From Lytechinus pictus (Eukaryota), in the NCBI RefSeq assembly GCF_037042905.1, contig NC_087260.1:24738001-24802000 (forward strand): a stretch of 64,000 bases of DNA. Direction: 5' to 3'. Under the pieces are notes generated by a model. The model was not told the origin of the DNA, did not search any database, and saw only the letters and a program-made list of their open reading frames with translations. Of this stretch, positions 47,050 to 64,000 are shown piece by piece. Numbering within the stretch: position 1 is the stretch's first letter; every line of letters starts with the position of its first letter. A program made the position numbers and the translations under genes.

Positions 47050-47256
47050 TTTTTTCCTTCAGCAAGAAACTGATCCACAATGTGCTGCACTCAACCCAGG
47101 TGAGGTAAATGGGTACCGATAGGAAGTAATTCCTTTAAAAAAATGTGTGTGCTATGAACGCCTAGCTTAGCCGGGTAATATAGGAGCGCTTTGAGGACCT
47201 AACAAGGTGGATATGTGCGCAATATAATACCCGATATTATTATTATTATTATTATT
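47050..47256 (+). mobile_element. 5'-truncated SINE whose (ATT)n tail abuts the retrotransposon stack
   Basis: Same core and 3' end as the SINE at 44638. Confidence 0.85.
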
Positions 47257-50200
47257 TCCATTGTCCACAACTTGATGTTCTGTTAGTATATTAAACAGCA
47301 ACCGGACTTCTTCCAGAAATCTAGGGTTATTGTTCTATATTCTATCAAATGGGTCCTCTTCTCATTGTCACTTCTCTTTCTAATTCAAGACCTTCCGTAA
47401 GATATGAGCTGTTCCAAGCAAGCTTGCCTTCTGTATCGTTTCAAAGGACACCTCGACTCCTAGAACAGCCAGAAAGCTTATGTGTCTTGTTGTCACTGTT
47501 CCTAGGGCTCCGATGACTATTGGTACCACCTTCGTCTTCACCTTCCATTTCCTTCTCAGCTCCCATGCCAGATCGTTATACTTCTGTATCTTTTCCTCCT
47601 CTTTACGCCAAGCTCTGCAGTCTCCCGGAATCGCAATATCTATGATGATACATTCCTTATCCTTCTTCTTCAAGAGAACGATGTCTGGTCGTCTAGCTTC
47701 AATGACCTTGTCTGTCTGGATATTAAAATCCCATAAAAGTTTTACATCGTCGTTCTCTACTACAGGCTCTGCCCGATGTTCGTACCATTTTTCCGCATGG
47801 GGTAAGTGGTACTTCTTGGCCAGACCCCAATGAACTGCAGCTGCTACTCAGTCGTGCCTTCCTTTGTACTCAGTCTGTGCCATTTTGCTGCATTCACTCA
47901 CCAGATGAGACACCGTTTCGTCTTTGTCATGACACATTCTACATGAGGGAGATGTATGCTCCTTTTCAACTTTGGCTCTTCGGTAATTTGTTCTAATTGC
48001 TTGGTCCTGAGCAGCAACTAGCATACTTTCCGTCTCCTTCTTTAAACTTCCTCGTTTCAGCCACTGCCAACTCTCTGGTCCAGCAAACTCCTCTGTCTGT
48101 CTTTGACTGCCGTCATGATGGTATCCATCTGGCCTTCAATATAGCAGTATAGGCTTTGTTCCTCATATCTTACAGTCTCCTCTATTCCAGCCAGACCACG
48201 TCCTCCCTTCTCTCTTGACACATAAAGTCTATCTACATCAGACTTTGGGTGAAACATCCCATGCATAGTTGGCAACTTCCTTGTCTTCCTGTCCAGGGTT
48301 TCGAGTTCAAGCTTGATCCATTTAACTATGCCAGCAGCATATCTCACTAGGGCTACTGCCCAAGTGTTAACAGCCTTCACCATGTTTCCAGCATTTAGTT
48401 TGGATTTGAGCACCTGTCGAATTCTCCTGATATACTCTGTCTCAATCTTCTTCTTCATTTCTTGATGTTTCAACTGATCTGCCTCTAATATTCCGAGATA
48501 TTTATAGCTACCACCGTCTTCGATTGATCTGATCTCTTCTCCGTTCAGCATCTGGAAGTTGTTGTCATTGGCTGGCTTACTTCTCATGAGAGTAATCATT
48601 GCACATTTATCCAACCCAAACTGCATACCGATGTCTTCGCTGAAGATCCGCACAGTGTTGATGAGAGACTCCAAGTCACTTCGTGTCTTACCAAACAGCT
48701 TCAAATCGTCCATGTATAATAGATGGTTGATTTTTGCCTTGCTCTTGAACTCATATCCTAGCCTGGATCTTCCGAGTACCTTAGTTAGTGGTGTCATTGC
48801 TATCACAAACAGCAATGGAGATAGACTATCTCCCTGAAAGATTCATCTCTTGATACCAACCTCTCCAAGTACTTCACCATTACTTTCCAACTTAGTTCTC
48901 CATCTCGTCATACTTGTAATGAGGAACCTTCTGATATTGTCTGCTACCCCTAACATTTCCATAGACTCGATGATCCAAGAGTGCGGAACCATGTCGTATG
49001 CTTTCTTGTAGTCAATTCATGCCATTGCGAGGTTCGTTTTTTCTTTTCTTGCTGTCTTTCATAATTCCTTTGTCGATGCATAGTTGTTCTTTTGTTCCTC
49101 TACTTCCTTTTCTACATCCCTTCTGTTCCCATGGTAGTATGTCTTGATGGTCCAGGTGTTGATATATTTCTTCTGATATTAGGCCAGTCAGTAACTTCCA
49201 GAGAATCGGCAAGCAGGTAATTGGACGGTAGTTTGACGGAATGTTGCCTTTGGTAGGATCCTTTGGGATGAGAACCGTTCTTCCTTTTGTCATCCAATCA
49301 GGGGGGTTACCATTCATGACAATCTCGTTCATCTGCATGCTCAGCCTTTCATGAAGATTTGTGAACCTTTTAACCCAGAAAGCTTGCACACCGTCTGGAC
49401 CGGCAGCTTTCCATGGCGCCATTTTCCGAATGATCTTTTCTAGCTTGCTTTTGTTGATCGTCAGATCATCCTGTGCAACTATAGTTGCACATTCCTCTTT
49501 CGTTGTTTTCAACCACATAGCTTCTTGGTTGTGATTGTGTGGTTGGCTCCAAATGTTGCTCCAGAAGGCAAGTGCTGCAGCTGGATCTGGTGGTGGAACT
49601 TCGTCTTTAATCTTTCCATTTATTTCTTGGTAGAACCTCTTCTGGTTGTTCTCAAACAAGGAATTCTGTCTATACTGTGACACTCGATCGGTGTACCTCT
49701 TTACTTTTGCTGTAGTGCTTGCTATTCTTTGTTTTAGTTCCTCCACGACGATCTTCCTTCCTTTCCTTCTAATACTGTACTTCTCCTCAAGGTACTTAAA
49801 ATCATTGATATCTGCTTTGCCAAGGTTTATCTCTGTCAGTCTTGATAGGTCTGTCCTCCATCCCTTTATCTGATTATCAAGTCTCCTTTTCCATGGTGGT
49901 AGGCAGTGCTTCCTTGTGTTCTCCTGTTTTCTTACACCTAAGCTCTCTGTTACCAGAACTGCTCCAGCATATATGAGATTATTGGTATCCTCAATACTGT
50001 CTGAGCTGATAAACTTCATAACATCGTTGACTTTCTGAGTTTCTATCAGCAGTTTCTCTCTTGGTATTCTCTTCAGATTAGGAGGGGTGGGGCGCTATCC
50101 TTGTGTTAACCCCTCTTTTATCTCCAATAATATCATCTTTATCTCTTCTTGCTCTTCATCCAATCTGTTAGTGGTTGGATCCAATTCTGTTTGAAATTGA

Positions 50201-51101
50201 GCTGTTGCGTCTGTCTGCTCTTCTCTTCCCGGTCTGAGTACTTCCTCCTGCTCATCTCTCACAGGCTCATACACATTTCGTCTGATCCCTTCCCTCTCAA
50301 CTTCAGTCAGTAACTCATTCCTTTTGATCACACGTACCTGATCTGCAAGTATTTGCTCTGATGTTGGGAAAAGACCCTTCTCTTGCCAGATCTTGTACAT
50401 TCTCTTGATGTAGCCTCTTTCCTGGTCAGGTCTGCTCTCATAATAACATTTCATGACATTCATATTGTCTCTTCTGCTCCATTCTCTTCTTGTTGAAGTT
50501 TTTGGTCCAGTAGTAGATTGACGACTGGATCCTGCCTGAGCCTCCACACAATCCATACCGGGCGCGAGCGAACTATGCAGGCTAGTTCTCTCGTTTTCGC
50601 CGTTAACGTTTGTATTCAAATCTGTATTCATCATTTGCATGAGTGATTGTGCCGTATCCCTGGCTCGGGGAAAAGAGTTGGCGTTACCCTGGAACTTTAC
50701 AATTAAAGTGTAAAAAAATTTTGTTCAGCTAGGCCGTTTATCTCCCAAAGTATCTCAGTTCTCCACCATCATAATCGTCTCCTTTCATCGTTCTACGTCA
50801 CTCAAAGTAGCGCGTAACAATGGTTGCCATCAAGCCAGCGTAGTATCATCTACTTGTTATCGTGCGCGCTTCTCGAATAACAACTTTCTATGAAATTTCG
50901 ATAAAAAACATCATGAAACTCACTGATATATGTCCTAATTATTCTCCAAATGCTAATCACGGTACTCCATCGGGTTCCTGGTGTTGTATTGCATCTGCTG
51001 ATATAGATTTCCTTCCAGAAATCGTAAGATAAACAGTAAAATGATGGCAAAATACGGGAGCAACTTTTTAACACGTCCGTTCAGTAAGGATTTGCGCCCT
51101 C
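47257..51101 (-). mobile_element. R4/Dong-clade non-LTR retrotransposon A (degenerate single ORF 50640-47380: N-terminal helical domain, RT, CCHC, restriction-like endonuclease)
   Basis: WKAAGPDG, YRPITCL, FQGDSLSPLLF, YMDD, CRMC..ET..H...C, RHD, RPDI, IDIAIP, KY; in-frame TAG at 50095, other stops and frameshifts; (ATT)n on both sides. The 5' boundary is inferred. Confidence 0.9.
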
Positions 51102-51220
51102 TATTATTATTATTATTATTATTCCTCTAAACAGGATCAAGTCCGTATTTTTTTCTTGAATAACTTTGCTCTAACAAAAAGCACCAAGTAATTTCAAGTG
51201 CAACTAGGAACTTTGCACTA

Positions 51221-54200
51221 CTAATGTCCGAGAGTCTTTCTTATCAATCTGGTTGTACCCAAGATAGCTGCCTTCTGAATGTCGTACATCCGAAGGTGAG
51301 GAGAGATCTTGGTTATGCAGGCTTCCATTCCCTTCTTCACCATTCCTGAGTGACCAATGATGACTGGTGTGACCTCTGCTTTCACGTTCCACATCCTCTC
51401 GATCTCAATCCTTAGGTCTTGATACTTGAGCCGTTTGTCTCTTTCCTTTACAGCAATGTTGATATCATGGGGAACAGAGACCTCAATGATATTTACTACG
51501 TTGTTGTCTCTGACGATGATGTCCGGCTTGTTGCAGTTGATGGTTCTATCCGTTAGTATGCCACAGTTCCAATATATGGTGCTGTTATTGATCGTGGTGA
51601 TCGTTTGTGGCTGATGTTCCCAAGCGTGATCACAAGTCATTTCACCGCGATCCTTCAGTAGTTGCAATTGGATAAGTTTGGCAATATTGTCATGTCTTGT
51701 GATGTACTCAGTTCCAGCAAGAGTCGAACATGCTGATACCAAATGCATGATTGTTTCGGTCTCTTTTCCACACATCCTGCAAGTGTCGTCTGTGTCTGTT
51801 CTGAGGATAGATTTTTCGTAGGCACGGGTCCTCACCACCTGGTCCTGAATAGCATAGACGAACCCTTCAGTTTCACCTCTTAGTCCCGCCGACTTAAGCC
51901 ATTGATGTGTGTCTTTCTGGTCTACAAACTCCCGATGCGTCTGTTTTTCATGGTGGCCATGAAGTCGCTTGGATTTAAGTTGCTCTTGAAGTTTCTTGTG
52001 AAAGGAGCATTTAAGTCTTGCCTTCTCTTTTTCACCGTAGGGTAGTGTCAGTCGATGTTGTGCCAATAAGATAGATGCTTGCTTGTTAATGGAGTATATT
52101 GCTTGACATTTATCATAATCGAGGGATATACTCGTCAGTATATCAGGTGGATTGGATAGGTAGTTGGCGAGGTTCGTTGCTTCCATATTCCAGACCATCT
52201 CAATTTGTTGTAGACCTCTTCCTCCAAGATCACGGGGAAGGTACAACCTTTCGATTGCGGCCTTTGGGTGATGTAATCTGTGCATCGTTAATTGCTTTCT
52301 GGTCATAACATCTAGGCCACATATATCAGCTAGTCTCCAGTTAACAATACCAAAACTGTATCTAAGCACAGGAATGGCTAGAGTGTTGATCGCTTCAATC
52401 TTATTTTTGGCATTCAGTTCGGATTTGAGGATCAGCCTGAGTCTTCTTTTGTATTCTGATGTTGCCTTCTCCTTCATTGTGTTATGGCTAATGACATCGT
52501 TCTCAGCTATGCCTAGATATTTATATGTCGAATCATTAGTCAGTTCCTTGATTGATGTTTCCTCATCTTGCACAAACATGTCGCCTGTATTTACCCTCCG
52601 TCCTCGTACAAGTGTAACTTTGGCACACTTGTCTATACCAAACGACATCTTGATGTCATCGCTGAAATGTTTAACTACTGCTATCATCTTGTGAAGTTCA
52701 TCGTCATTTTTTGCAAAGAGTTTGATATCATCCATATATATCAGATGGTTTATTGTCGTAGATACATCTTGCCCTTTGTATCTGTAGCCATAACTCGTAG
52801 CGTGTAAGAGATAGCATACTGGATTGAGAGCTAAGCAGAATAAAAGAGGAGATAAGGAATCTCCTTGAAATATTCCTCTCTTGATTCGGACCCCCTCCAC
52901 TGTCATCGAACGGGTGCCTATTGTAAGCGAAAGAGTAGTGCTCCATTGTTTCATACCTGCTGATATGCACTTGACTATTTGTGGATTGATGTGATACATC
53001 TCTAGAACTTTGATGATCCAACTATGTGGTACGCTGTCAAATGCCTTCCTGTAGTCTATCCAAGCCATGGATAGATTGGTCTGTCTTTGGCGAGCATTAC
53101 CGATTATTGCTTTGTTTGTCATTAGGTGATCTTTACAACCCTTCTTTCCTTTCCGACAACCTTTCTGAGTGACCTCCATTATGTCATGATCATCGATGTG
53201 TCGTTCGATGTGCATGGCAAGCGTTGATGTCAGCAGCTTATACATAGTATTAAGGCAAGTGATTGGACGATAGTTCTTAGGTTGTTTTGGGTCTTTGCCT
53301 TTGTACAGTAGATATGTCCTTCCAATTGGCAGCCATTTCTCAATAGTCCTGTTCCCTTTGATAATGTCATTGATGATTTTCAGTAGATTGGTATGGGTGC
53401 TACCAAACCTCTTTATCCAGAAGTTTTGTACACCATCTGGTCCAGGGCTTTTCCAGTTCTGAGTGTTCCTTATGATATTGTGTAGTTCAGGTAAGGTCAG
53501 GTCTACTAGCTGCTGCGCTGGCACATTGGACCATTTGTCTGCTTCCGACTGAATCCAGGGAGTTTCTTCGTGAGTGATATCATTATCCCAAAGTTCTTTC
53601 CAGTAGTTCTTCATATCATCTGCCGATGGAACATCTTTCGTCTCAGTCATCTTTGAATCCAGCTCACGAAATAATTTCTTTCTGTTTCCATGGAAGAGTT
53701 TATTCTGCCGTTTGAAATTGTTACTCTTTGTGTATCTCTTAACACGGTGTTTGAGAGCATTTATCTTCATTTTGAGCGTTTCTATAACAGTTGTCCTAGT
53801 ACGGGTCTTATCGTCAATGCGATATTTCTTCTGAAGTCTTTTGGTATTGCTCTTCATCCGATTGGATTTGATGTTTCCCTTATCTACTTCTCCGAGTTGA
53901 GCCACGTCTTTATATAGTTCTGCTATCTTAGTTTGTAGCCTTTTCTTCCATTCAGGAGCCTTCTTCTTATGATTGGTAGAGTGGTTTGATGAATGAAGCT
54001 TGAGTCCCATATGTTCTGTTACAGTTTTTGCTCCTGCCCAGATAAGACAGTTTATCTCCAACAAACTGGAAGGACTAGATTGCACCTTTTCAAGCATTTT
54101 ATCTACTTTGTCGATCACGCTCCTAGTAGTACAGCACCTTGTGTCGATCTTGGGAATTTGTGGTCTATCTGATATTGATATTCCCTTCACATATTCAAAG

Positions 54201-54925
54201 TTGCTCCTCAGTGCTGATAACAGCCGTTGATCGGAATCTCTGTCTTCATTTGTCGAGTCTTGTGATACAATCGCATCTCTCTCGGGTACAGATGATATGA
54301 TATTACCCGATACGTTCCTTTCACATTCGTTATCTTGTTGAATGTGAGGCTCTCCGCCGCATAGAAAATGGGCAACATCGTCCCCATGTTCAGTATCAGT
54401 AATTTCTTGTCTTTTCTTAGCCTTTTCTATTGCTGTAACCCGAAGAGTACGATATTTCACTTTAGGTTGTTGCAAGTGCTGGTGTATGTCTACATGTGAA
54501 GAGAATCCAGTCTTATAGGAGCTGTTTTTTCTTCTGTTCATCGTTGATCCCTTTCCCTCTCCACCAGCGGGCTTGTTGTCAGATGTGTCACAGTACTGAA
54601 AGAAATGTGCACCTCTTTGGTATTCGGCCTCAATCTGTGTGTCTACCGTTTCGATTTCATCTAGTTTTTGTAGAAGAGACAAGGAACACGCCCCAAATTG
54701 AGCGATGTAGTCATCTTTCTTTTTTTTCTTCTGAGCACTGTCCATATCAAGACGATTCATACGTTGTTCTTGTGATATTCTTTGGTTGTGTTCTCCATCT
54801 CGTAAGCCCCTATCACTCTGCGTCCGAACATCCTGTTGATTGTTGAATATAATCCCCTCGTCAAGAAATATATTCACTGTATTTCCAGAAACTGTACTTC
54901 CTTCATCATGGATAGAATTTCTCAC
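51221..54925 (-). CDS. Reverse transcriptase + CCHC + restriction-like endonuclease (1234 aa, uninterrupted; track start is GTG)
   Basis: WKSPGPDG, MAWIDYRKAFDSVPH, QGDSLSPLLF, YMDD, YKYLG, CRMC-H-C, RHD, KPDII, IEVSVP, K..KY. Confidence 0.95.
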   Translation of the reverse strand: MRNSIHDEGSTVSGNTVNIFLDEGIIFNNQQDVRTQSDRGLRDGEHNQRISQEQRMNRLDMDSAQKKKKKDDYIAQFGACSLSLLQKLDEIETVDTQIEAEYQRGAHFFQYCDTSDNKPAGGEGKGSTMNRRKNSSYKTGFSSHVDIHQHLQQPKVKYRTLRVTAIEKAKKRQEITDTEHGDDVAHFLCGGEPHIQQDNECERNVSGNIISSVPERDAIVSQDSTNEDRDSDQRLLSALRSNFEYVKGISISDRPQIPKIDTRCCTTRSVIDKVDKMLEKVQSSPSSLLEINCLIWAGAKTVTEHMGLKLHSSNHSTNHKKKAPEWKKRLQTKIAELYKDVAQLGEVDKGNIKSNRMKSNTKRLQKKYRIDDKTRTRTTVIETLKMKINALKHRVKRYTKSNNFKRQNKLFHGNRKKLFRELDSKMTETKDVPSADDMKNYWKELWDNDITHEETPWIQSEADKWSNVPAQQLVDLTLPELHNIIRNTQNWKSPGPDGVQNFWIKRFGSTHTNLLKIINDIIKGNRTIEKWLPIGRTYLLYKGKDPKQPKNYRPITCLNTMYKLLTSTLAMHIERHIDDHDIMEVTQKGCRKGKKGCKDHLMTNKAIIGNARQRQTNLSMAWIDYRKAFDSVPHSWIIKVLEMYHINPQIVKCISAGMKQWSTTLSLTIGTRSMTVEGVRIKRGIFQGDSLSPLLFCLALNPVCYLLHATSYGYRYKGQDVSTTINHLIYMDDIKLFAKNDDELHKMIAVVKHFSDDIKMSFGIDKCAKVTLVRGRRVNTGDMFVQDEETSIKELTNDSTYKYLGIAENDVISHNTMKEKATSEYKRRLRLILKSELNAKNKIEAINTLAIPVLRYSFGIVNWRLADICGLDVMTRKQLTMHRLHHPKAAIERLYLPRDLGGRGLQQIEMVWNMEATNLANYLSNPPDILTSISLDYDKCQAIYSINKQASILLAQHRLTLPYGEKEKARLKCSFHKKLQEQLKSKRLHGHHEKQTHREFVDQKDTHQWLKSAGLRGETEGFVYAIQDQVVRTRAYEKSILRTDTDDTCRMCGKETETIMHLVSACSTLAGTEYITRHDNIAKLIQLQLLKDRGEMTCDHAWEHQPQTITTINNSTIYWNCGILTDRTINCNKPDIIVRDNNVVNIIEVSVPHDINIAVKERDKRLKYQDLRIEIERMWNVKAEVTPVIIGHSGMVKKGMEACITKISPHLRMYDIQKAAILGTTRLIRKTLGH

Positions 54926-54942
54926 CTTCTCAGTGTTGGTGA

Positions 54943-57900
54943 TTACCGAGTTTTTCCTTTTCCCGATCTCTCTCTATCATTGTTGGTGTCGTGCAATTTG
55001 TCTACTTTATCTGTTATTCGTTTTCCCCTGTCATCTTGATTCTTTGTTGCATTACGCTTTCGTTCTCTACAAAGACTTTGGGCATTTTCCTTTATTCTCT
55101 CTAATTCAATGTCGCTGAAGTATTGAGTACTAATGATACTTTGTTTCATGTCCACTAGACCTTCTTCTCCAACGGATGGGTCACCATTATTTACAAGCCA
55201 CGTTTCTCTCATTCTCTTCCTGTAATATCTAGTTTTATGAGATACATCAGTCGCAAAGTAGAAGCAAGTCATAAGATTTTCCTTCTCTTTATTTGACCAT
55301 AATTTCTTTTCTCCTTTTCTTCTCACTTTGTTGTGTAGTGATTGTGTGTCTAGAATCATCGATGTTCCTACTTTGGCTTCGTCACCATTGGCACTATTGT
55401 AGTCAGAATGGCCATAGATCTCGTAGGCATCATCATCACCGGTATTTTTGTCATCAGCATCATTATGGTCCTCGATGTCATCATCATCGGCTTTTTTGTC
55501 ATCACTATCACCATGGCCATCGTTGGCATCAACAACATCGGCATTATCATCAGGGCCATTATTGGTATCACCAGTGCCGGCATTGTCATGATCACTGTCC
55601 TTAGCATCCCCATGGTCATCGATGGTATCGTCATTACCGGCATTATTGACTTCTCTACAAAGTATGTGTGCCTCTTGCTTTATTCTCTCTAATTCAATCT
55701 CGCTGAAATATTGAGTACGAAGAATACTTTGTTTCATTTCTGCCAGAGCTTGCTCTCCAACGGATGGATCACCATTATTTTTAAGCCACGTTTCTTTCAT
55801 TCTCTTCCTGTAATGTCTAGTTTTATGAGATACATCAGTCGCAAAGTAGAAGCAAGTCATAAGATTTTCCTTCTCTTTATTTGACCATAATTTCTTTTCT
55901 CTTTTCCTCCTCACTTTGCTGTGTAGTGATTGTGTATCAGTGATCTTCGAATTTTCATTATAATTGGCTGGCCATGTCGTATCATTGGCCTTGGGTGGAT
56001 GTCTTGATAATCTCTTGTCACACGTTTCTACTCTCCCGTCTTTATTTGGTTGGCCTCCTTCGTTCCTGCCTTTATGATACACATTCTCACCATCAATATC
56101 GGCATCATAGTCATCATCAGCTGTGTCATTGTTCACAACATCGCCATGGTTATCGTTTATAGCAACATTGTCATTATCTGCTTCATCGTTATTAGCTTCA
56201 GCATGGTCGTCGTTGGCATCATCATTAGGCTTGCCAGCATTATTGACTTCAGCATCACCGAGATCATCATTGGTATCGTCATCACCGGTATCATTGTTGT
56301 CAGCATCATCATGGCCATCGTTGAAATTATCAACACCGACATTATTGTCATCACCATCATGGTTTTCGTTGTCATCTTCATTACCATGGTCGCCGTTGGC
56401 ATCGCCATAGACGGCATTCTTGTCATCAGCATATCTATGGCCATCGTTGGCATTGTCAGCACCGGCATTTTTGTCATCACCATCCCCATGATCGTCGCTG
56501 GTTTCGTCATTACCGGCATTATCGATTTTTCTACAAAGTATATGTGCCTTTTGTTTTATTCTCTCTAATTCAATCTCGCTGAAATATTGAGTACGAAGGA
56601 TACTTTGTTTCATGTCTGCCAGAGCTTGCTCTCCAACGGATGGATCACCATTATTTTTAAGCCACGTTTCTCTCATTCTCTGCCTGTAATGTCTAGTTTT
56701 ATGAGATACATCAGTCGCAAAGTAGAAGCAAGTCATAAGATTTTCCTTCTCTTTATTTGACCATAATTTCTTTTCTCTTTTCCTCCTCACTTTGCTGTGT
56801 AGCGATTGTGTATCTGTGATCTTCGAATTTTCATTATAATTGGCTAGCCATGTCGTATCATTGGCCTTGGGTGGATGTCTTGATAATCTCTTGTCACACG
56901 TTTCTACTCTCCCGTCTTTATTTGGTTGGCCTCCTTCGTTCTTGCCTTTATGATACAAATTCTCACCATCAGTATCGGCATCATCGTCGTCATCAGCTTT
57001 ATGATTTTTCACAACATCGCCATGGTTATCGATTATAGCAACATTGTCATTATCTGCTTCATCGTTATTAGCTTCAGCACGGTCGTCGTTGGCATCGTCT
57101 TTACCAATATTATTGACTTCAGCATCGCCGAGAACATCGTTGGTATCGTCATCACTGGTAATATTGTTGTCAGCATCATCATGGTCATCGTTGGTATCGC
57201 CATCACCGGTATTGTTGTTGTCACCATCACCGAGATCATCATTGGTATCGTCATCACCGGTATCATTGTTGTCAGCATCATCATTGCCATTGTTGAAATC
57301 ATCAACACCGACATTATTGTCATCACCATCATGGTTTTCGTTGTCATCTTCATTATCATGGTCGCCGTTGGCATCGCCATCGCCGGCATTCTTGTCATCA
57401 GCATATCTATGGCCATCGTTTGCATCGTCAGGGCCGGCATTTTTGTCATCACCATCCCCATGATCATCGCTGGTTTCGTCATTACCGGCATTATCGACTT
57501 CTCTACAAAGTATGTGTGCCTTTTGTTTTATTCTCTCTAATTCAATCTCGCTGAAATATTGAGTACGAAGGATACTTTGTTTCATGTCTGCCAGAGCTTG
57601 CTCTCCAACGGATGGATCACCATTATTTTCAAGCCACGTTTCTCTCATTCTCTTCCTGTAATGTCTAGTTTTATGAGATACATCAGTCGCAAAGTAGAAG
57701 CAAGTCATAAGATTTTCCTTCTCTTTATTTGACCATAATTTCCTTTCTCTTTTTCTCTTCACTTTGCTGTGTAGCGATTGAGTATGTAGAATCTTCGACT
57801 TTCCAACTTTTGTTTCATTAACATTGGCATTATTGTCATCAGCCTCTCTATGGTCATCGTAGGCAACATCATCACCGGCGTTCTTGTAATCCGCATCAAT

Positions 57901-58617
57901 ATAAACATCGTTGGCGTCGTCAGGGCCGGCATTTTTGTCATCACCATCCCCATGATCATCTTTGGTTTCGTCATTACCGGCATCATTGTCAACACCATCA
58001 TCGTGGCCATCGTTGATATCTTTATTCCTTGCATTATTGTCATCAGCAACACCATTATCATCGTTGACAGCTTCAGTAAGGTCTACGTTGTCATCATCAT
58101 TATCATTATCATCATCACTTGCACCACCTACTTTCCGGTTCGAAATATTCACTTGGTTCCCTTGCTCAGTAAGATATATTTTAGCTCGCAATTTGATATG
58201 ATGTAATTGTGAGTCCGTGAAATATTTCGAACGGAAGATACTATGTTTCATATCCGCGAGTGCTTGTTCACTGACATTTGGGTCTTCGTTATTCAGAAGC
58301 CATAAATTCCTCATTGACCGTCTATAGTTTCTCGTCTTAGTGGTGTTTAATTTAGTTGCTACATAAAAGCAGAAAATAAGTTCTTCTTTTTCTACTCTCG
58401 ACCACCTTTTCTTTGTCTCTTTATCAGTTCTAGATCTAGTGGTTCTGCATTTGGGCTCATCTTGCGAAATACGGTTTGAAACAGATTCCATTCCTAGTAT
58501 TTCACGCCCGGTTTCTTTCCAATGAGGTATTGATTTTGATTTCCGAGTCCTACAAATGTGATCATTCATAGTTACTTCTTTATAATTGTCACTGGGACTC
58601 TTCTTTCGTGATTCCAT
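54943..58617 (-). CDS. 1224-aa protein with five Dong N-terminal (Myb-like) domains separated by Asp/Asn-rich spacers
   Basis: W(S)xxExxxLxxCFY..YRxxMRxxW..SVxEQALADMK.SI....F unit occurs 5 times and aligns by eye to the single N-terminal domain of element A. Confidence 0.8.
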   Translation of the reverse strand: MESRKKSPSDNYKEVTMNDHICRTRKSKSIPHWKETGREILGMESVSNRISQDEPKCRTTRSRTDKETKKRWSRVEKEELIFCFYVATKLNTTKTRNYRRSMRNLWLLNNEDPNVSEQALADMKHSIFRSKYFTDSQLHHIKLRAKIYLTEQGNQVNISNRKVGGASDDDNDNDDDNVDLTEAVNDDNGVADDNNARNKDINDGHDDGVDNDAGNDETKDDHGDGDDKNAGPDDANDVYIDADYKNAGDDVAYDDHREADDNNANVNETKVGKSKILHTQSLHSKVKRKRERKLWSNKEKENLMTCFYFATDVSHKTRHYRKRMRETWLENNGDPSVGEQALADMKQSILRTQYFSEIELERIKQKAHILCREVDNAGNDETSDDHGDGDDKNAGPDDANDGHRYADDKNAGDGDANGDHDNEDDNENHDGDDNNVGVDDFNNGNDDADNNDTGDDDTNDDLGDGDNNNTGDGDTNDDHDDADNNITSDDDTNDVLGDAEVNNIGKDDANDDRAEANNDEADNDNVAIIDNHGDVVKNHKADDDDDADTDGENLYHKGKNEGGQPNKDGRVETCDKRLSRHPPKANDTTWLANYNENSKITDTQSLHSKVRRKREKKLWSNKEKENLMTCFYFATDVSHKTRHYRQRMRETWLKNNGDPSVGEQALADMKQSILRTQYFSEIELERIKQKAHILCRKIDNAGNDETSDDHGDGDDKNAGADNANDGHRYADDKNAVYGDANGDHGNEDDNENHDGDDNNVGVDNFNDGHDDADNNDTGDDDTNDDLGDAEVNNAGKPNDDANDDHAEANNDEADNDNVAINDNHGDVVNNDTADDDYDADIDGENVYHKGRNEGGQPNKDGRVETCDKRLSRHPPKANDTTWPANYNENSKITDTQSLHSKVRRKREKKLWSNKEKENLMTCFYFATDVSHKTRHYRKRMKETWLKNNGDPSVGEQALAEMKQSILRTQYFSEIELERIKQEAHILCREVNNAGNDDTIDDHGDAKDSDHDNAGTGDTNNGPDDNADVVDANDGHGDSDDKKADDDDIEDHNDADDKNTGDDDAYEIYGHSDYNSANGDEAKVGTSMILDTQSLHNKVRRKGEKKLWSNKEKENLMTCFYFATDVSHKTRYYRKRMRETWLVNNGDPSVGEEGLVDMKQSIISTQYFSDIELERIKENAQSLCRERKRNATKNQDDRGKRITDKVDKLHDTNNDRERSGKGKTR

Positions 58618-58645
58618 ATTTATCTTTTAGTCGATTGGTGGACTC

Positions 58646-58794
58646 NNNNNNNNNNNNNNNNNNNNNNNNNNNNNNNNNNNNNNNNNNNNNNNNNNNNNNN
58701 NNNNNNNNNNNNNNNNNNNNNNNNNNNNNNNNNNNNNNNNNNNNNNNNNNNNNNNNNNNNNNNNNNNNNNNNNNNNNNNNNNNNNNNNNNNNNN
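58646..58794. other. Assembly gap (149 N)
   Basis: Run of N. Confidence 1.
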
Positions 58795-60731
58795 TTCCGT
58801 ATTTTTTTCTTGAATAACTTTGCTCTAACAAAAAGCACCAAGTAATTTCAAGTGCAACTAGGAACTTTACACTACTAATGTCCGAGAGTCTTTCTTATCA
58901 ATCTGGTTGTACCCAAGATAGCTGCCTTCTGAATGTCGTACATCCGAAGGTGAGGAGAGATCTTGGTTATGCAGGCTTCCATTCCCTTCTTCACCATTCC
59001 TGAGTGACCAATGATGACTGGTGTGACCTCTGCTTTCACGTTCCACATTCTCTCGATCTCAATCCTTAGGTCTTGATACTTGAGCCGTTTGTCTCTTTCC
59101 TTTACAGCAATGTTGATATCATGGGGAACAGAGACCTCAATGATATTTACTACGTTGTTGTCTCTGACGATGATGTCCGGCTTGTTGCAGTTGATGGTTC
59201 TATCCGTTAGTATGCCACAGTTCCAATATATGGTGCTGTTATTGATCGTGTTGATCGTTTGTGGCTGATGTTCCCAAGCGTGATCACAAGTCATTTTACC
59301 GCGATCCTTCAGTAGTTGCCAATGGATAAGTTTGGCAATATTGTCATGTCTTGTGATGTACTCAGTTCCAGCAAGAGTCGAACATGCTGATACCAAATGC
59401 ATGATTGTTTCGGTCTCTTTTCCACACATCCTGCAAGTGTCGTCTGTGTCTGTTCTGAGGATAGATTTTTCGTAGGCACGGGTCCTCACCACCTGGTCCT
59501 GAATAGCATAGACGAACCCTTCAGTTTCACCTCTTAGTCCCGCCGACTTAAGCCATTGATGTGTGTCTTTCTGGTCTACGAACTCCCGATGCGTCTGTTT
59601 TTCATGGTGGCCATGAAGTCGCTTGGATTTAAGTTGCTCTTGAAGTTTCTTGTGAAAGGAGCATTTAAGTCTTGCCTTCTCTTTTTCACCGTAGGGTAGT
59701 GTCAGTCGATGTTGTGCCAATAAGATAGATGCTTGCTTGTTAATGGAGTATATTGCTTGACATTTATCATAATCGAGGGATATACTCGTCAGTATATCAG
59801 GTGGATTGGATAGGTAGTTGGCGAGGTTCGTTGCTTCCATATTCCAGACCATCTCAATTTGTTGTAGACCTCTTCCTCCAAGATCACGGGGAAGGTACAA
59901 CCTTTCGATTGCGGCCTTTGGGTGATGTAATCTGTGCATCGTTAATTGCTTTCTGGTCATAACATCTAGGCCACATATATCAGCTAGTCTCCAGTTAACA
60001 ATACCAAAACTGTATCTAAGCACAGGAATGGCTAGAGTGTTGATCGCTTCAATCTTATTTTTGGCATTCAGTTCGGATTTGAGGATCAGCCTGAGTCTTC
60101 TTTTGTATTCTGATGTTGCCTTCTCCTTCATTGTGTTATGGCTAATGACATCATTCTCAGCTATGCCTAGGTATTTATATGTCGAATCATTAGTCAGTTC
60201 CTTGATTGATGTTTCCTCATCTTGCACAAACATGTCGCCTGTATTTACCCTCCTTCCTCGTACAAGTGTAACTTTGGCACACTTGTCTATACCAAACGAC
60301 ATCTTGATGTCATCGCTGAAATGTTTAACTACTGCTATCATCTTGTGAAGTTCATTGTCATTTTTTGCAAAGAGTTTGATATCATCCATATATATCAGAT
60401 GGTTTATTGTCGTAGATACATCTTGCCCTTTGTATCTGTAGCCATAACTCGTAGCGTGTAAGAGAGAGCATACTGGATTGAGAGCTAAGCAGAATAAAAG
60501 AGGAGATAAGGAATCTCCTTGAAATATTCCTCTCTTGATTCGGACCCCCTCCACTATCATCGAACGGGTGCCTATCGTAAGCGAAAGAGTAGTGCTCCAT
60601 TGTTTCATGCCTGCTGATATGCACTTGACTATTTGTGGATTGATGTGATACATCTCTAGAACTTTGATGATCCAACTATGTGGTACGCTGTCAAATGCCT
60701 TCCTGTAGTCTATCCAAGCCATGGATAGATT
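58795..60731 (-). mobile_element. 5'-truncated copy C of the element B family (ORF 58875-60722)
   Basis: Near-identical to B positions 51144-53077; ends in (ATT)n at 60729-60761. Confidence 0.95.
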
Positions 60732-60761
60732 ATTATTATTATTATTATTATTATTATCATT

Positions 60762-62714
60762 CCTCTAAACAGGATCAAGTCCGTATTTTTTCTTGAATAA
60801 CTTTGCTCTAACAAAAAGCACCAAGTAATTTCAAGTGCAACTAGGAACTTTACACTACTAATGTCCGAGAGTCTTTCTTATCAATCTGGTTGTACCCAAG
60901 ATAGCTGCCTTCTGAATGTCGTACATCCGAAGGTGAGGAGAGATCTTGGTTATGCAGGCTTCCATTCCCTTCTTCACCATTCCTGAGTGACCAATGATGA
61001 CTGGTGTGACCTCTGCTTTCACGTTCCACATTCTCTCGATCTCAATCCTTAGGTCTTGATACTTGAGCCGTTTGTCTCTTTCCTTTACAGCAATGTTGAT
61101 ATCATGGGGAACAGAGACCTCAATGATATTTACTACGTTGTTGTCTCTGACGATGATGTCCGGCTTGTTGCAGTTGATGGTTCTATCCGTTAGTATGCCA
61201 CAGTTCCAATATATGGTGCTGTTATTGATCGTGTTGATCGTTTGTGGCTGATGTTCCCAAGCGTGATCACAAGTCATTTTACCGCGATCCTTCAGTAGTT
61301 GCCAATGGATAAGTTTGGCAATATTGTCATGTCTTGTGATGTACTCAGTTCCAGCAAGAGTCGAACATGCTGATACCAAATGCATGATTGTTTCGGTCTC
61401 TTTTCCACACATCCTGCAAGTGTCGTCTGTGTCTGTTCTGAGGATAGATTTTTCGTAGGCACGGGTCCTCACCACCTGGTCCTGAATAGCATAGACGAAC
61501 CCTTCAGTTTCACCTCTTAGTCCCGCCGACTTAAGCCATTGATGTGTGTCTTTCTGGTCTACGAACTCCCGATGCGTCTGTTTTTCATGGTGGCCATGAA
61601 GTCGCTTGGATTTAAGTTGCTCTTGAAGTTTCTTGTGAAAGGAGCATTTAAGTCTTGCCTTCTCTTTTTCACCGTAGGGTAGTGTCAGTCGATGTTGTGC
61701 CAATAAGATAGATGCTTGCTTGTTAATGGAGTATATTGCTTGACATTTATCATAATCGAGGGATATACTCGTCAGTATATCAGGTGGATTGGATAGGTAG
61801 TTGGCGAGGTTCGTTGCTTCCATATTCCAGACCATCTCAATTTGTTGTAGACCTCTTCCTCCAAGATCACGGGGAAGGTACAACCTTTCGATTGCGGCCT
61901 TTGGGTGATGTAATCTGTGCATCGTTAATTGCTTTCTGGTCATAACATCTAGGCCACATATATCAGCTAGTCTCCAGTTAACAATACCAAAACTGTATCT
62001 AAGCACAGGAATGGCTAGAGTGTTGATCGCTTCAATCTTATTTTTGGCATTCAGTTCGGATTTGAGGATCAGCCTGAGTCTTCTTTTGTATTCTGATGTT
62101 GCCTTCTCCTTCATTGTGTTATGGCTAATGACATCATTCTCAGCTATGCCTAGGTATTTATATGTCGAATCATTAGTCAGTTCCTTGATTGATGTTTCCT
62201 CATCTTGCACAAACATGTCGCCTGTATTTACCCTCCTTCCTCGTACAAGTGTAACTTTGGCACACTTGTCTATACCAAACGACATCTTGATGTCATCGCT
62301 GAAATGTTTAACTACTGCTATCATCTTGTGAAGTTCATTGTCATTTTTTGCAAAGAGTTTGATATCATCCATATATATCAGATGGTTTATTGTCGTAGAT
62401 ACATCTTGCCCTTTGTATCTGTAGCCATAACTCGTAGCGTGTAAGAGAGAGCATACTGGATTGAGAGCTAAGCAGAATAAAAGAGGAGATAAGGAATCTC
62501 CTTGAAATATTCCTCTCTTGATTCGGACCCCCTCCACTATCATCGAACGGGTGCCTATCGTAAGCGAAAGAGTAGTGCTCCATTGTTTCATGCCTGCTGA
62601 TATGCACTTGACTATTTGTGGATTGATGTGATACATCTCTAGAACTTTGATGATCCAACTATGTGGTACGCTGTCAAATGCCTTCCTGTAGTCTATCCAA
62701 GCCATGGATAGATT
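60762..62714 (-). mobile_element. 5'-truncated copy D, apparently identical to C (period 1983 bp)
   Basis: Same protein, same truncation point, same interrupted (ATT)n tract. Confidence 0.95.
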
Positions 62715-62744
62715 ATTATTATTATTATTATTATTATTATCATT

Positions 62745-64000
62745 CCTCTAAACAGGATCAAGTCCGTATTTTTTCTTGAATAACTTTGCTCTAACAAAAA
62801 GCACCAAGTAATTTCAAGTGCAACTAGGAACTTTACACTACTAATGTCCGAGAGTCTTTCTTATCAATCTGGTTGTACCCAAGATAGCTGCCTTCTGAAT
62901 GTCGTACATCCGAAAGTGAGGAGAGATCTTGGTTATGCAGGCTTCCATTCCCTTCTTCACCATTCCTGAGTGACCAATGATGACTGGTGTGACCTCTGCT
63001 TTCACGTTCCACATCCTCTCGATCTCAATCCTTAGGTCTTGATACTTGAGCCGTTTGTCTCTTTCCTTTACAGCAATGTTGATATCATGGGGAACAGAGA
63101 CCTCAATGATATTTACTACGTTGTTGTCTCTGACGATGATGTCCGGCTTGTTGCAGTTGATGGTTCTATCCGTTAGTATGCCACAGTTCCAATATATGGT
63201 GCTGTTATTGATCGTGGTGATCGTTTGTGGCTGATGTTCCCAAGCGTGATCACAAGTCATTTTACCGCGATCCTTCAGTAGTTGCCAATGGATAAGTTTG
63301 GCAATATTGTCATGTCTTGTGATGTACTCAGTTCCAGCAAGAGTCGAACATGCTGATACCAAATGCATGATTGTTTCGGTCTCTTTTCCACACATCCTGC
63401 AAGTGTCGTCTGTGTCTGTTCTGAGGATAGATTTTTCGTAGGCACGGGTCCTCACCACCTGGTCCTGAATAGCATAGACGAACCCTTCAGTTTCACCTCT
63501 TAGTCCCGCCGACTTAAGCCATTGATGTGTGTCTTTCTGGTCTAAAAACTCCCGATGCGTCTGTTTTTCATGGTGGCCATGAAGTCGCTTGGATTTAAGT
63601 TGCTCTTGAAGTTTCTTGTGAAAGGAGCATTTAAGTCTTGCCTTCTCTTTTTCACCGTAGGGTAGTGTCAGTCGATGTTGTGCCAATAAGATAGATGCTT
63701 GCTTGTTAATGGAGTATATTGCTTGACATTTATCATAATCGAGGGATATACTCGTCAGTATATCAGGTGGATTGGATAGGTAGTTGGCGAGGTTCGTTGC
63801 TTCCATATTCCAGACCATCTCAATTTGTTGTAGACCTCTTCCTCCAAGATCACGGGGAAGGTACAACCTTTCGATTGCGGCCTTTGGGTGATGTAATCTG
63901 TGCATCGTTAATTGCTTTCTGGTCATAACATCTAGGCCACATATATCAGCTAGTCTCCAGTTAACAATACCAAAACTGTATCTAAGCACAGGAATGGCTA
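62745..64000 (-). mobile_element. Copy E of the element B family, runs off the window
   Basis: Same 3' UTR and RLE; private substitutions EFLDQ and PHFR. Confidence 0.95.

What the first reader, a model, noticed from the sequence alone, without database searches (positions are those of the whole stretch)
54943..58617. R4/Dong retrotransposon with a five-fold amplified N-terminal domain on acidic tethers
Seen: element A has one ~70-aa N-terminal domain (WSRRDNMNVMKCYY..GYIKRMYKIW..SEQILADQVRVI). Element B has a 1224-aa ORF with five homologous units: one diverged (~58190-58410) and four near-identical (~57500-57760, 56535-56790, 55655-55915, 55070-55325). They are separated by long D/N/G/H-rich spacers, and the frame stays open over 3.7 kb despite many indels between units. 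Knowledge: RLE-clade elements normally have a single ORF with compact N-terminal DNA-binding domains (Myb/zinc finger in R2). Inference: a multivalent 'beads on an acidic string' reader, possibly matched to a repetitive (TAA)n target, with spacers acting as DNA mimic or chaperone. I do not know this architecture from described R4/Dong families.
Basis: partly seen in the sequence, partly recalled or inferred. Interest (0 to 1): 0.85.

Follow-up and report, generated by a model that had tools for sequence, protein, structure and literature searches.

The report
Dong-type retrotransposon with five DNA-binding units
A young sea-urchin jumping gene that targets (TAA)n microsatellites carries five copies of its clade's Myb-like DNA-binding domain on long acidic linkers; relatives usually have one, so this is a real but functionally untested variant of a known element type.

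Summary
Window 54943-58617(-) is a 1224-aa open frame with five homologous ~97-aa basic units. They are separated by strongly acidic D/N/G-rich spacers built from a 51-nt (17-aa) minisatellite.

It is not an assembly artefact. All four copies in this genome that reach unit 1 lie on different chromosomes, are 98.6-99.3% identical and have five units. 5'-truncated copies keep 3, 2 or 1. All lie in (TAA)n.

The 1224-aa ORF is specific to this copy. In two copies the array runs on into RT-CCHC-RLE as one frame of about 2,430 aa. The window copy differs by one base in an A-run near 54,955, so a programmed frameshift is not needed.

The unit is the N-terminal Myb/SANT-like domain already reported for R4/Dong elements (PMC7998251). 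It has no Pfam model, and fold and language-model matches point weakly but consistently to Myb/trihelix domains.

Among 90 close RT relatives, 77 have one unit and one has two. Arrays of 2-4 units occur in other database proteins, for example from Lepidoptera. An acidic tail after the domain is common across the clade.

The array grew stepwise: unit 1 is ancient and selected, unit 5 is intermediate, and units 2-4 are recent. Multivalent (TAA)n reading and DNA mimicry remain untested.

Verdict: a new variant of a known kind, of moderate interest.

The parts
51102..58645 (-). Visible part of element B, a Dong-type RLE LINE. It runs from the edge of the N gap to the 3' (TAA)n. Full-length copies are about 7.9 kb including a ~365-nt 5' UTR.
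   Evidence: 98.6-99.3% identical over 7.5 kb to copies on three other chromosomes. 5' UTR and (TAA)n flanks.
58646..58794 (.). Run of 149 N (assembly gap or mask) hiding the 5' UTR and the upstream (TAA)n. Not filled.
58438..58617 (-). N-terminal leader, aa 1-60
58147..58437 (-). Unit 1, the diverged Myb/SANT-like domain with its basic lead-in (aa 61-157)
   Evidence: 66 bits to the outside profile. About 50% aa identity to the other units, with synonymous sites saturated (pS ~0.8, pN ~0.33).
57772..58146 (-). Acidic spacer 1 (125 aa, net charge -28)
57478..57771 (-). Unit 2
   Evidence: 79 bits
56800..57477 (-). Acidic spacer 2 (226 aa, net -58). Made of 51-nt minisatellite; its length differs between copies (unit spacing 324, 307 or 282 aa).
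56506..56799 (-). Unit 3
55924..56505 (-). Acidic spacer 3 (194 aa, net -45)
55630..55923 (-). Unit 4
55336..55629 (-). Acidic spacer 4 (98 aa, net -28). Similar to the C-terminal half of spacer 1.
55042..55335 (-). Unit 5 (87% nt identity to units 2-4)
54943..54965 (-). Copy-specific frame break: a one-base length difference in a short A-run, followed by the stop codon at 54943-54945
   Evidence: Alignment with three other copies. A contig of public run X1 carries the other length (table 4).
51221..54925 (-). Remainder of the polyprotein: pre-RT region, reverse transcriptase (about 52508-53290), CCHC knuckle and restriction-like endonuclease (about 51356-51799)
   Evidence: PF00078 at E 7e-29. 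Best solved-structure relatives are R2 proteins at E 4e-26. CCHC and PD...E motifs read in the translation.
51102..51220 (-). 3' UTR (51124-51220) ending in (TAA)7 (51102-51123)
50095..50640 (-). Start of element A, a second, compact (~3.9 kb) Dong-type family with a single unit (about 50251-50520). It is inserted head-to-tail directly after B's (TAA)7.

Best explanation
Shown: element B is a recently active (TAA)n-specific Dong-type LINE (single ORF, RT plus C-terminal CCHC/restriction-like endonuclease) of a sea urchin, probably Lytechinus pictus. Its ~2,430-aa polyprotein begins with five copies of the clade's N-terminal Myb/SANT-like domain. Each copy has a basic lead-in and is followed by a strongly acidic linker encoded by a 51-nt minisatellite. 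This five-unit form was the template for retrotransposition, because independent insertions with different 5' truncation points all carry the same module order. The array grew stepwise by in-frame tandem duplication of 'unit + acidic tail' modules. Unit 1 split from the rest long ago, and both lineages stayed under purifying selection. Unit 5 split later (dS ~0.27), and units 2-4 split recently (dS 0.04-0.06). Inferred: as with the N-terminal Myb/zinc-finger module of R2, the units bind the target DNA and position the endonuclease. Several units on flexible linkers raise avidity for the repetitive (TAA)n target. The acidic tails, a clade-wide feature enlarged here, damp non-specific DNA binding by the basic units. 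My odds: identity and architecture about 0.95; at least two units functionally required about 0.7; all five contributing to multivalent target capture about 0.35.
For: Architecture. Family trait and mobility: 68 own-genome matches. All four copies that reach unit 1 have five units; two of them reach the 5' UTR, one is cut short just upstream of unit 1 and the window copy's 5' UTR is hidden by the N gap. Copies are 98.6-99.3% identical with unrelated flanks. Truncated copies abut (TAA)n at different points. Single ORF: open frames of 2463 and 2432 aa; the frame break is specific to the window copy. Domain identity: the profile finds 1031 proteins, and the long ones carry RT. AF2 gives a four-helix model at pLDDT 83. 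Top fold matches are GT-1 trihelix Z 7.0, Sap1 DBD, Zeste, TRF1/2, Tbf1, DMAP1 SANT and the R2 Myb region. Language-model neighbours are Myb_Rap1 and Myb clusters. HHpred evidence for a Myb/SANT-like domain in R4/Dong is published (PMC7998251). Selection: unit 1 versus the others has pS ~0.8 against pN ~0.33. Unit 5 versus units 2-4 has omega 0.41-0.45, binomial p 0.02-0.04. All five units score 63-79 bits to an outside profile. Acidic tail across the clade: domains average +3.9 and the next 60 aa average -5.9, against a control of +2.9. An independent two-unit relative has acidic repeat spacers (P0228).
Against: No binding data exist. All fold matches fall below the tools' noise thresholds (Foldseek E > 0.3, VIA Z <= 7), and there is no Pfam or PDB sequence match. 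Units 2-4 are too young to show constraint (Sd 2-3, omega 0.5-0.7). Within modules 2 and 3, unit and spacer are equally diverged (94.8% vs 93.0%). The open frame through the array is enforced anyway by the RT downstream in the same ORF, so it does not show that the spacers or extra units are useful. 77 of 90 close RT relatives manage with one unit. Linkers of 100-226 disordered residues cannot impose a register on a 3-bp repeat.
Confidence: 0.5

Rival explanations
1. Tolerated passenger expansion. The minisatellite-rich N-terminal linker is recombination-prone and has repeatedly duplicated 'unit + spacer' modules. Only one or two units (such as 1 and 5) matter, and units 2-4 and the long spacers are neutral baggage kept in frame only because RT lies downstream in the same ORF.
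For: Units 2-4 differ by only 3-3.5% and show no significant constraint. Unit and spacer are equally diverged in modules 2 and 3. Spacer 2 varies in length between copies. 5' regions of related elements also amplify into obviously non-functional half-unit satellites (P0002, P0155). Single-unit relatives are the norm.
Against: The five-unit form is the only one seen in all four copies that reach unit 1, and it produced the whole recent burst. No unit has decayed. Multi-unit arrays arose independently in several lineages. Older units 1 and 5 were retained under constraint.
Confidence: 0.35
2. The units bind RNA rather than target DNA, for example the element's own (UAA)n-ending 3' UTR. The array then acts as a cis-RNA clamp or chaperone, a gag-like role.
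For: The transcript ends in (UAA)n. Basic helical domains with acidic tails also occur in RNA chaperones (general knowledge).
Against: The nearest folds are double-stranded-DNA binders. In R2 the homologous position holds the DNA-targeting Myb/ZF module (PMC7998251, PMC10499050).
Confidence: 0.1
3. Two-ORF element: the 1224-aa repeat protein is a separate ORF1, joined to RT-RLE by a programmed -1 frameshift.
For: In the window copy the RT frame is -1 relative to the repeat ORF, at an A-rich site.
Against: Three other copies and a contig of run X1 have one more base in that A-run, and two copies read straight through as one frame.
Confidence: 0.03
4. Assembly artefact: a single unit falsely expanded by mis-assembly of repeats next to the gap.
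For: An N gap lies 29 nt upstream of the ORF start. Short-read contigs break inside the array.
Against: The same five-unit order appears at four loci on four chromosomes with unique flanks, with position-specific differences between units.
Confidence: 0.02

Closest known systems
[quoted passage not shown]
   Same: Single ORF with RT and a C-terminal CCHC + restriction-like endonuclease. Inserted in (TAA)n with (TAA)n on both sides. N-terminal Myb/SANT-like domain without zinc fingers (PMC3812793, PMC7998251).
   Different: Described elements, and 77 of 90 database relatives, have one N-terminal unit and an ORF of about 1,100-1,250 aa. This family has five units plus about 640 aa of acidic minisatellite linker, and an ORF of about 2,430 aa.
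Element A in the same window: a compact (~3.9 kb) Dong-type family of the same genome
   Same: Same target, same domain order, a homologous unit (31% identity) and an acidic stretch after the unit.
   Different: One unit and no minisatellite spacers.
Multi-unit Dong-like proteins in databases (Colias eurytheme CAG4968898.1 with 3 units; Spodoptera frugiperda KAF9820227.1 with 2-3; P0003 with 4; P0228 with 2 units and acidic Pro/Asp/Glu repeat spacers)
   Same: Tandem copies of the same N-terminal domain ahead of RT. P0228 also has acidic repeat spacers.
   Different: Fewer units. Most have short spacers of 10-40 aa. None has five units or D/N/G minisatellite linkers. To my knowledge none is described in a paper.
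R2 elements (N-terminal zinc fingers + Myb)
   Same: RLE LINE with an N-terminal DNA-binding module that selects the target. The number of N-terminal motifs varies between subclades (one to three zinc fingers; from my knowledge of Kojima and Fujiwara's work). The RT is the nearest solved structure.
   Different: R2 has one Myb plus zinc fingers, an rDNA target and no acidic repeat linkers.
Cellular tandem-Myb and acidic-tail DNA binders (c-Myb R1R2R3; HMGB1 acidic tail)
   Same: Several helical DNA-binding repeats in one chain. An acidic disordered segment next to a basic DNA-binding domain can modulate binding (general knowledge).
   Different: These are analogies only: no homology was shown, and the linkers here are 10-50 times longer than those between c-Myb repeats.

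Membership tests
R4/Dong clade RLE LINE (Dong type) | Reverse transcriptase domain | tested here: met
   PF00078 at E 7e-29. R2 proteins are the best PDB sequence matches.
R4/Dong clade RLE LINE (Dong type) | CCHC motif and PD-(D/E)xK restriction-like endonuclease C-terminal to RT, with no APE domain | tested here: met
   C-x2-C-x8-H-x4-C, then RHD and KPD...IEVS motifs, read in the translation and conserved in the Pediculus homologue. The zf-RVT match is only weak. No APE match.
R4/Dong clade RLE LINE (Dong type) | Single ORF | tested here: met
   Open frames of 2463 and 2432 aa in two copies. The window copy is broken at an A-run.
R4/Dong clade RLE LINE (Dong type) | Site-specific insertion in (TAA)n | tested here: met
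   (TAA)n at both ends of full-length and truncated copies.
R4/Dong clade RLE LINE (Dong type) | N-terminal Myb/SANT-like domain without zinc fingers (PMC7998251) | tested here: met
   The unit profile recovers the N-termini of 77 of 90 RT homologues. No zinc-finger Pfam match in the N-terminal half.
R4/Dong clade RLE LINE (Dong type) | RT phylogeny groups with reference R4, Dong and Rex6 rather than R2, NeSL, CRE or Hero | not tested
   No reference sequences were available. Indirect only: 41% identity over RT-RLE to a Pediculus protein, and Pediculus is among the species listed as R4/Dong-like in PMC7998251.
[quoted passage not shown] | Three-helix bundle with a helix-turn-helix | tested here: inconclusive
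   AF2 gives four helices at pLDDT 83. The top matches are GT-1, Zeste, TRF1/2, Tbf1, DMAP1 and the R2 Myb region, but at Z 5-7 and Foldseek E > 0.3, below the tools' noise levels. Language-model neighbours are Myb clusters at 0.85.
[quoted passage not shown] | Sequence match to a Myb/SANT profile | tested here: not met
   No Pfam Myb family at E <= 1 for any of 121 domain sequences. No PDB sequence hit. Published HHpred reached 94.9% for nematode R4 only.
[quoted passage not shown] | Binds double-stranded DNA | not testable with these tools
   Needs EMSA or similar.
Two-ORF LINE with programmed frameshift | ORF1/ORF2 frame offset conserved among copies | tested here: not met

The most novel reading that the evidence does not exclude
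The array is an adaptive microsatellite-length reader. Each basic Myb-like unit binds a few TAA repeats weakly, and its acidic minisatellite tail masks it. Only long (TAA)n tracts that engage several units at once are then captured, steering a 7.9-kb element into long, harmless microsatellites. This would be a tunable, modular targeting principle for RLE LINEs.
Probability: 0.2. Interest if true: 0.75.

Novelty: new variant of a known kind. Interest (0 to 1): 0.5.

Why it matters
How microsatellite-specific RLE LINEs recognise their targets is unknown, and their N-terminal domain was recognised only in 2021. This genome holds a natural series that would let unit number and acidic tails be related to (TAA)n binding directly: a one-unit family (A), a five-unit family (B) and truncated copies. 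RLE LINEs are also being developed for site-specific gene insertion, so a modular, multiplied targeting domain is of practical interest. The case also shows how minisatellite instability inside a coding region can double the size of an active retrotransposon's protein without stopping it.

Tried and rejected
1. Pfam on the ORF and on 121 domain sequences gave no meaningful family. A PDB sequence search with the domain profile found nothing.
2. Foldseek and VIA searches gave themed but sub-threshold matches, so I treat the fold assignment as supported by concordance only.
3. Between-copy pN/pS was 0.4-0.8 in units, spacers and RT alike, with too few changes to discriminate.
4. Unit versus spacer divergence within modules 2 and 3 showed no differential constraint.
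5. Residual (TAA)n tract length was compared between B and A insertions. B copies sit in longer tracts (median sum about 100 vs 39 nt, Mann-Whitney p ~0.03, n = 6 vs 7). A copies are older, two A loci look like one duplicated segment and my boundaries were crude, so this is not counted as evidence.
6. Expression: run X1 holds 68% of the words, but its RNA status is only a guess and only contigs were available, so nothing can be said about transcription.
7. Rfam on the 5' UTR found no ribozyme; the CrcZ hit is a (TAA)n artefact.
8. Programmed frameshift and assembly artefact were both rejected.
9. Literature searches found no description of multi-unit R4/Dong N-termini. Repbase could not be consulted.
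Full report
**1. What is in the window**

The ORF listing gives a 1224-aa ORF at 54943..58617 on the minus strand. Aligned to unit 2, the others are 48% (unit 1), 94%, 91% and 74% identical. The single domain of the neighbouring element A is 31% identical.

At the nucleotide level units 2-4 are 96.5-97.2% identical and unit 5 is about 87%. The four spacers are 125, 226, 194 and 98 aa long and 68-73% D/N/G/A/H/T. They carry net charges of -28, -58, -45 and -28, whereas each 97-aa unit is +6 to +9. Tandem Repeats Finder shows that the spacers are arrays of a 51-nt (17-aa) repeat.

A run of 149 N at 58646-58794 lies just upstream of the start codon and hides the 5' UTR. I did not try to fill it.

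**2. Real, and a property of the family**

A six-frame search of the window's own genome (811 Mb) with one unit gave 68 matches. Only four copies reach unit 1. They lie on contigs C14, C3, C16 (the window) and C21, and all have five units in the same order. Unit spacings are 223, 324/307/282, 292 and 196 aa, so only spacer 2 varies in length.

These copies are 98.6-99.3% identical to the window copy over 7.5 kb, but their flanks are unrelated beyond the (TAA)n tracts at both ends. Other copies are 5'-truncated at different points and keep three, two or one unit. Their 5' junctions abut (TAA)n directly.

This is the signature of independent target-primed insertions from a five-unit template. 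It excludes mis-assembly, and it shows that the five-unit RNA was mobilised.

**3. The 1224-aa ORF is a copy-specific fragment**

Downstream in the -1 frame lies a 1234-aa frame with RT (PF00078, E 7e-29), a CCHC motif and restriction-like endonuclease motifs. In the C21 and C14 copies the array and RT-RLE form one uninterrupted frame of 2463 and 2432 aa. The C21 frame includes read-through of upstream microsatellite.

Alignment of the junction shows that the window copy differs from three other copies by one base in the length of a short A-run near 54,955. A 3.9-kb contig of public run X1 carries the other length. The family is therefore a single-ORF element.

**4. What kind of element it is**

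The evidence for the Dong type of the R4/Dong clade is as follows:
- a single ORF;
- RT followed by CCHC and RLE, with R2 proteins as the nearest solved structures (E 4e-26);
- no apurinic-type endonuclease;
- strict association with (TAA)n.

Dong elements of Bombyx, Anopheles and Biomphalaria are the known (TAA)n-specific LINEs (PMC3812793). The RT-RLE half is 40-45% identical to more than a thousand database proteins, including a Pediculus protein at 41%. I could not run an RT phylogeny against reference sequences, so clade placement rests on architecture and target.

Two near-identical gene models are named Lytechinus pictus in NCBI, so the genome is probably that sea urchin or a very close relative.

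**5. What the unit is**

A profile of the units found 1031 proteins at E <= 0.001 among 1.84 billion representatives, and the long ones carry RT. There is no Pfam model for the domain and no sequence match to any solved structure.

AlphaFold2 with a 121-sequence alignment gives a confident four-helix domain (pLDDT 83). Structural searches never reach the tools' significance levels, but the top of every list has the same theme:
- Arabidopsis GT-1 trihelix (Z 7.0);
- fission-yeast Sap1 DNA-binding domain (Z 6.4, Foldseek probability 0.96);
- Zeste;
- TRF1/TRF2, Tbf1 and NgTRF Myb domains;
- DMAP1 SANT;
- the Myb region of R2 itself.

Language-model neighbours are Myb_Rap1 and Myb clusters. Schön et al. 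2021 reported by HHpred a diverged N-terminal Myb/SANT-like domain in R4/Dong elements and proposed that it directs site-specific integration (PMC7998251). I conclude that the unit is that domain.

**6. How unusual five units are**

Among the 90 closest RT homologues of at least 1050 aa, 77 have exactly one unit, one has two and 12 have none detected.

In the domain-based search, 21 of 160 proteins have two or more near-complete units. Most are two closely spaced units. Colias has three, and one protein (P0003, assembly GCA_013332915.1) has four. P0228 is a complete RT-RLE protein with two units separated by acidic Pro/Asp/Glu repeats.

Across 79 domains of relatives, the domain averages +3.9 and the following 60 residues average -5.9. 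71% of these tails are at or below -3, against 19% for a control segment. So 'basic domain plus acidic tail' is the clade's standard module, and multiplication of that module has happened several times. The sea-urchin family is the extreme case, and I found no paper describing any of this.

**7. History and selection**

Self-alignment shows tandem modules of about 880-970 nt. Three layers of duplication can be distinguished:
- Unit 1 versus the others has saturated synonymous sites (pS about 0.8) but pN about 0.33. This duplication is old, and both lineages have been held as protein.
- Unit 5 versus units 2-4 gives dS about 0.27 and omega 0.41-0.45, with an excess of synonymous changes at p = 0.02-0.04.
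- Units 2-4 differ by dS 0.04-0.06, too little to test.

All five units still score 63-79 bits against a profile built without sea-urchin sequences.

Within modules 2 and 3 the unit and spacer are equally diverged (94.8% vs 93.0%), apart from in-frame indels. Because RT lies downstream in the same ORF, the open frame through the spacers is enforced regardless of whether the spacers do anything.

The evidence therefore supports a long-standing requirement for at least two units. It leaves the recent triplication and the giant linkers open to either an adaptive or a neutral reading.

**8. Mechanism**

By analogy with R2, whose N-terminal Myb/zinc-finger module binds the target and positions the endonuclease for target-primed reverse transcription (PMC10499050, PMC7998251), I infer that the units bind (TAA)n duplex. 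On a repetitive target several units can bind at once, which raises avidity. Linkers of 100-226 disordered residues would act as tethers, not rulers. The acidic tails may compete with DNA for the basic units and so suppress non-specific binding.

These steps are inferred and none was tested. The main rival is that the extra units and linkers are tolerated products of minisatellite instability. Related 5' regions can also amplify into clearly non-functional half-unit satellites (P0002, P0155). A crude comparison suggested that B insertions lie in longer (TAA)n tracts than insertions of the single-unit family A (p about 0.03), but age and sampling confound it.

**9. Verdict**

The domain is already known as a single copy. 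The five-fold array on acidic minisatellite linkers is a new variant of a known kind, real and mobilised, with its function untested.

Noticed in passing
window 58795-64000 (-): At least three 5'-truncated copies of family B lie in tandem with a 1983-bp period. All are cut at the same point (their ORFs start MAWIDYRKAF...) and each is followed by (ATT)11 (60729-60761 and 62712-62744). An identical truncation point suggests tandem duplication of one truncated insertion rather than repeated insertions.
   Followed up: partly
window 47234-51101 (-): Element A is a second, compact Dong-type family (about 3.87 kb, one unit). It starts directly after B's 3' (TAA)7. Its frame is interrupted by an in-frame stop at 50095-50097. 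At least seven other copies in the genome (96-98% identical) are also flanked by (TAA)n.
   Followed up: partly
window 54943-54965: The site noted elsewhere in the scan as a candidate programmed -1 frameshift is a one-base A-run length difference specific to this copy.
   Followed up: yes
G000:C12:29731005-29739381 and G000:C6:9789024-9854421: On C12, N-terminal modules of family B recur with a ~3.3-kb period, as a tandem array of an internal fragment. On C6, a two-unit copy recurs three times at ~31.7-kb spacing, consistent with a segmental duplication.
   Followed up: no
P0002 / P0155 (ENA assembly of another organism): Gene models consist of 7 to more than 15 tandem half-units (period about 83-87 aa, first two helices only) of the same domain. 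This looks like a satellite born from the 5' end of a Dong-like element.
   Followed up: no
P0228 (ENA): A complete RT-RLE protein with two units, each followed by acidic Pro/Asp/Glu-rich tandem repeats. This is an independent parallel to the sea-urchin architecture.
   Followed up: partly
L031:8587-8700 region (C21 copy, upstream flank): The degenerate (TAA/TGA/GAC)n microsatellite upstream of this copy reads in frame as a D/N-rich peptide resembling the spacers' composition. The acidic D/N spacers could derive from target-like microsatellite sequence. Untested.
   Followed up: no
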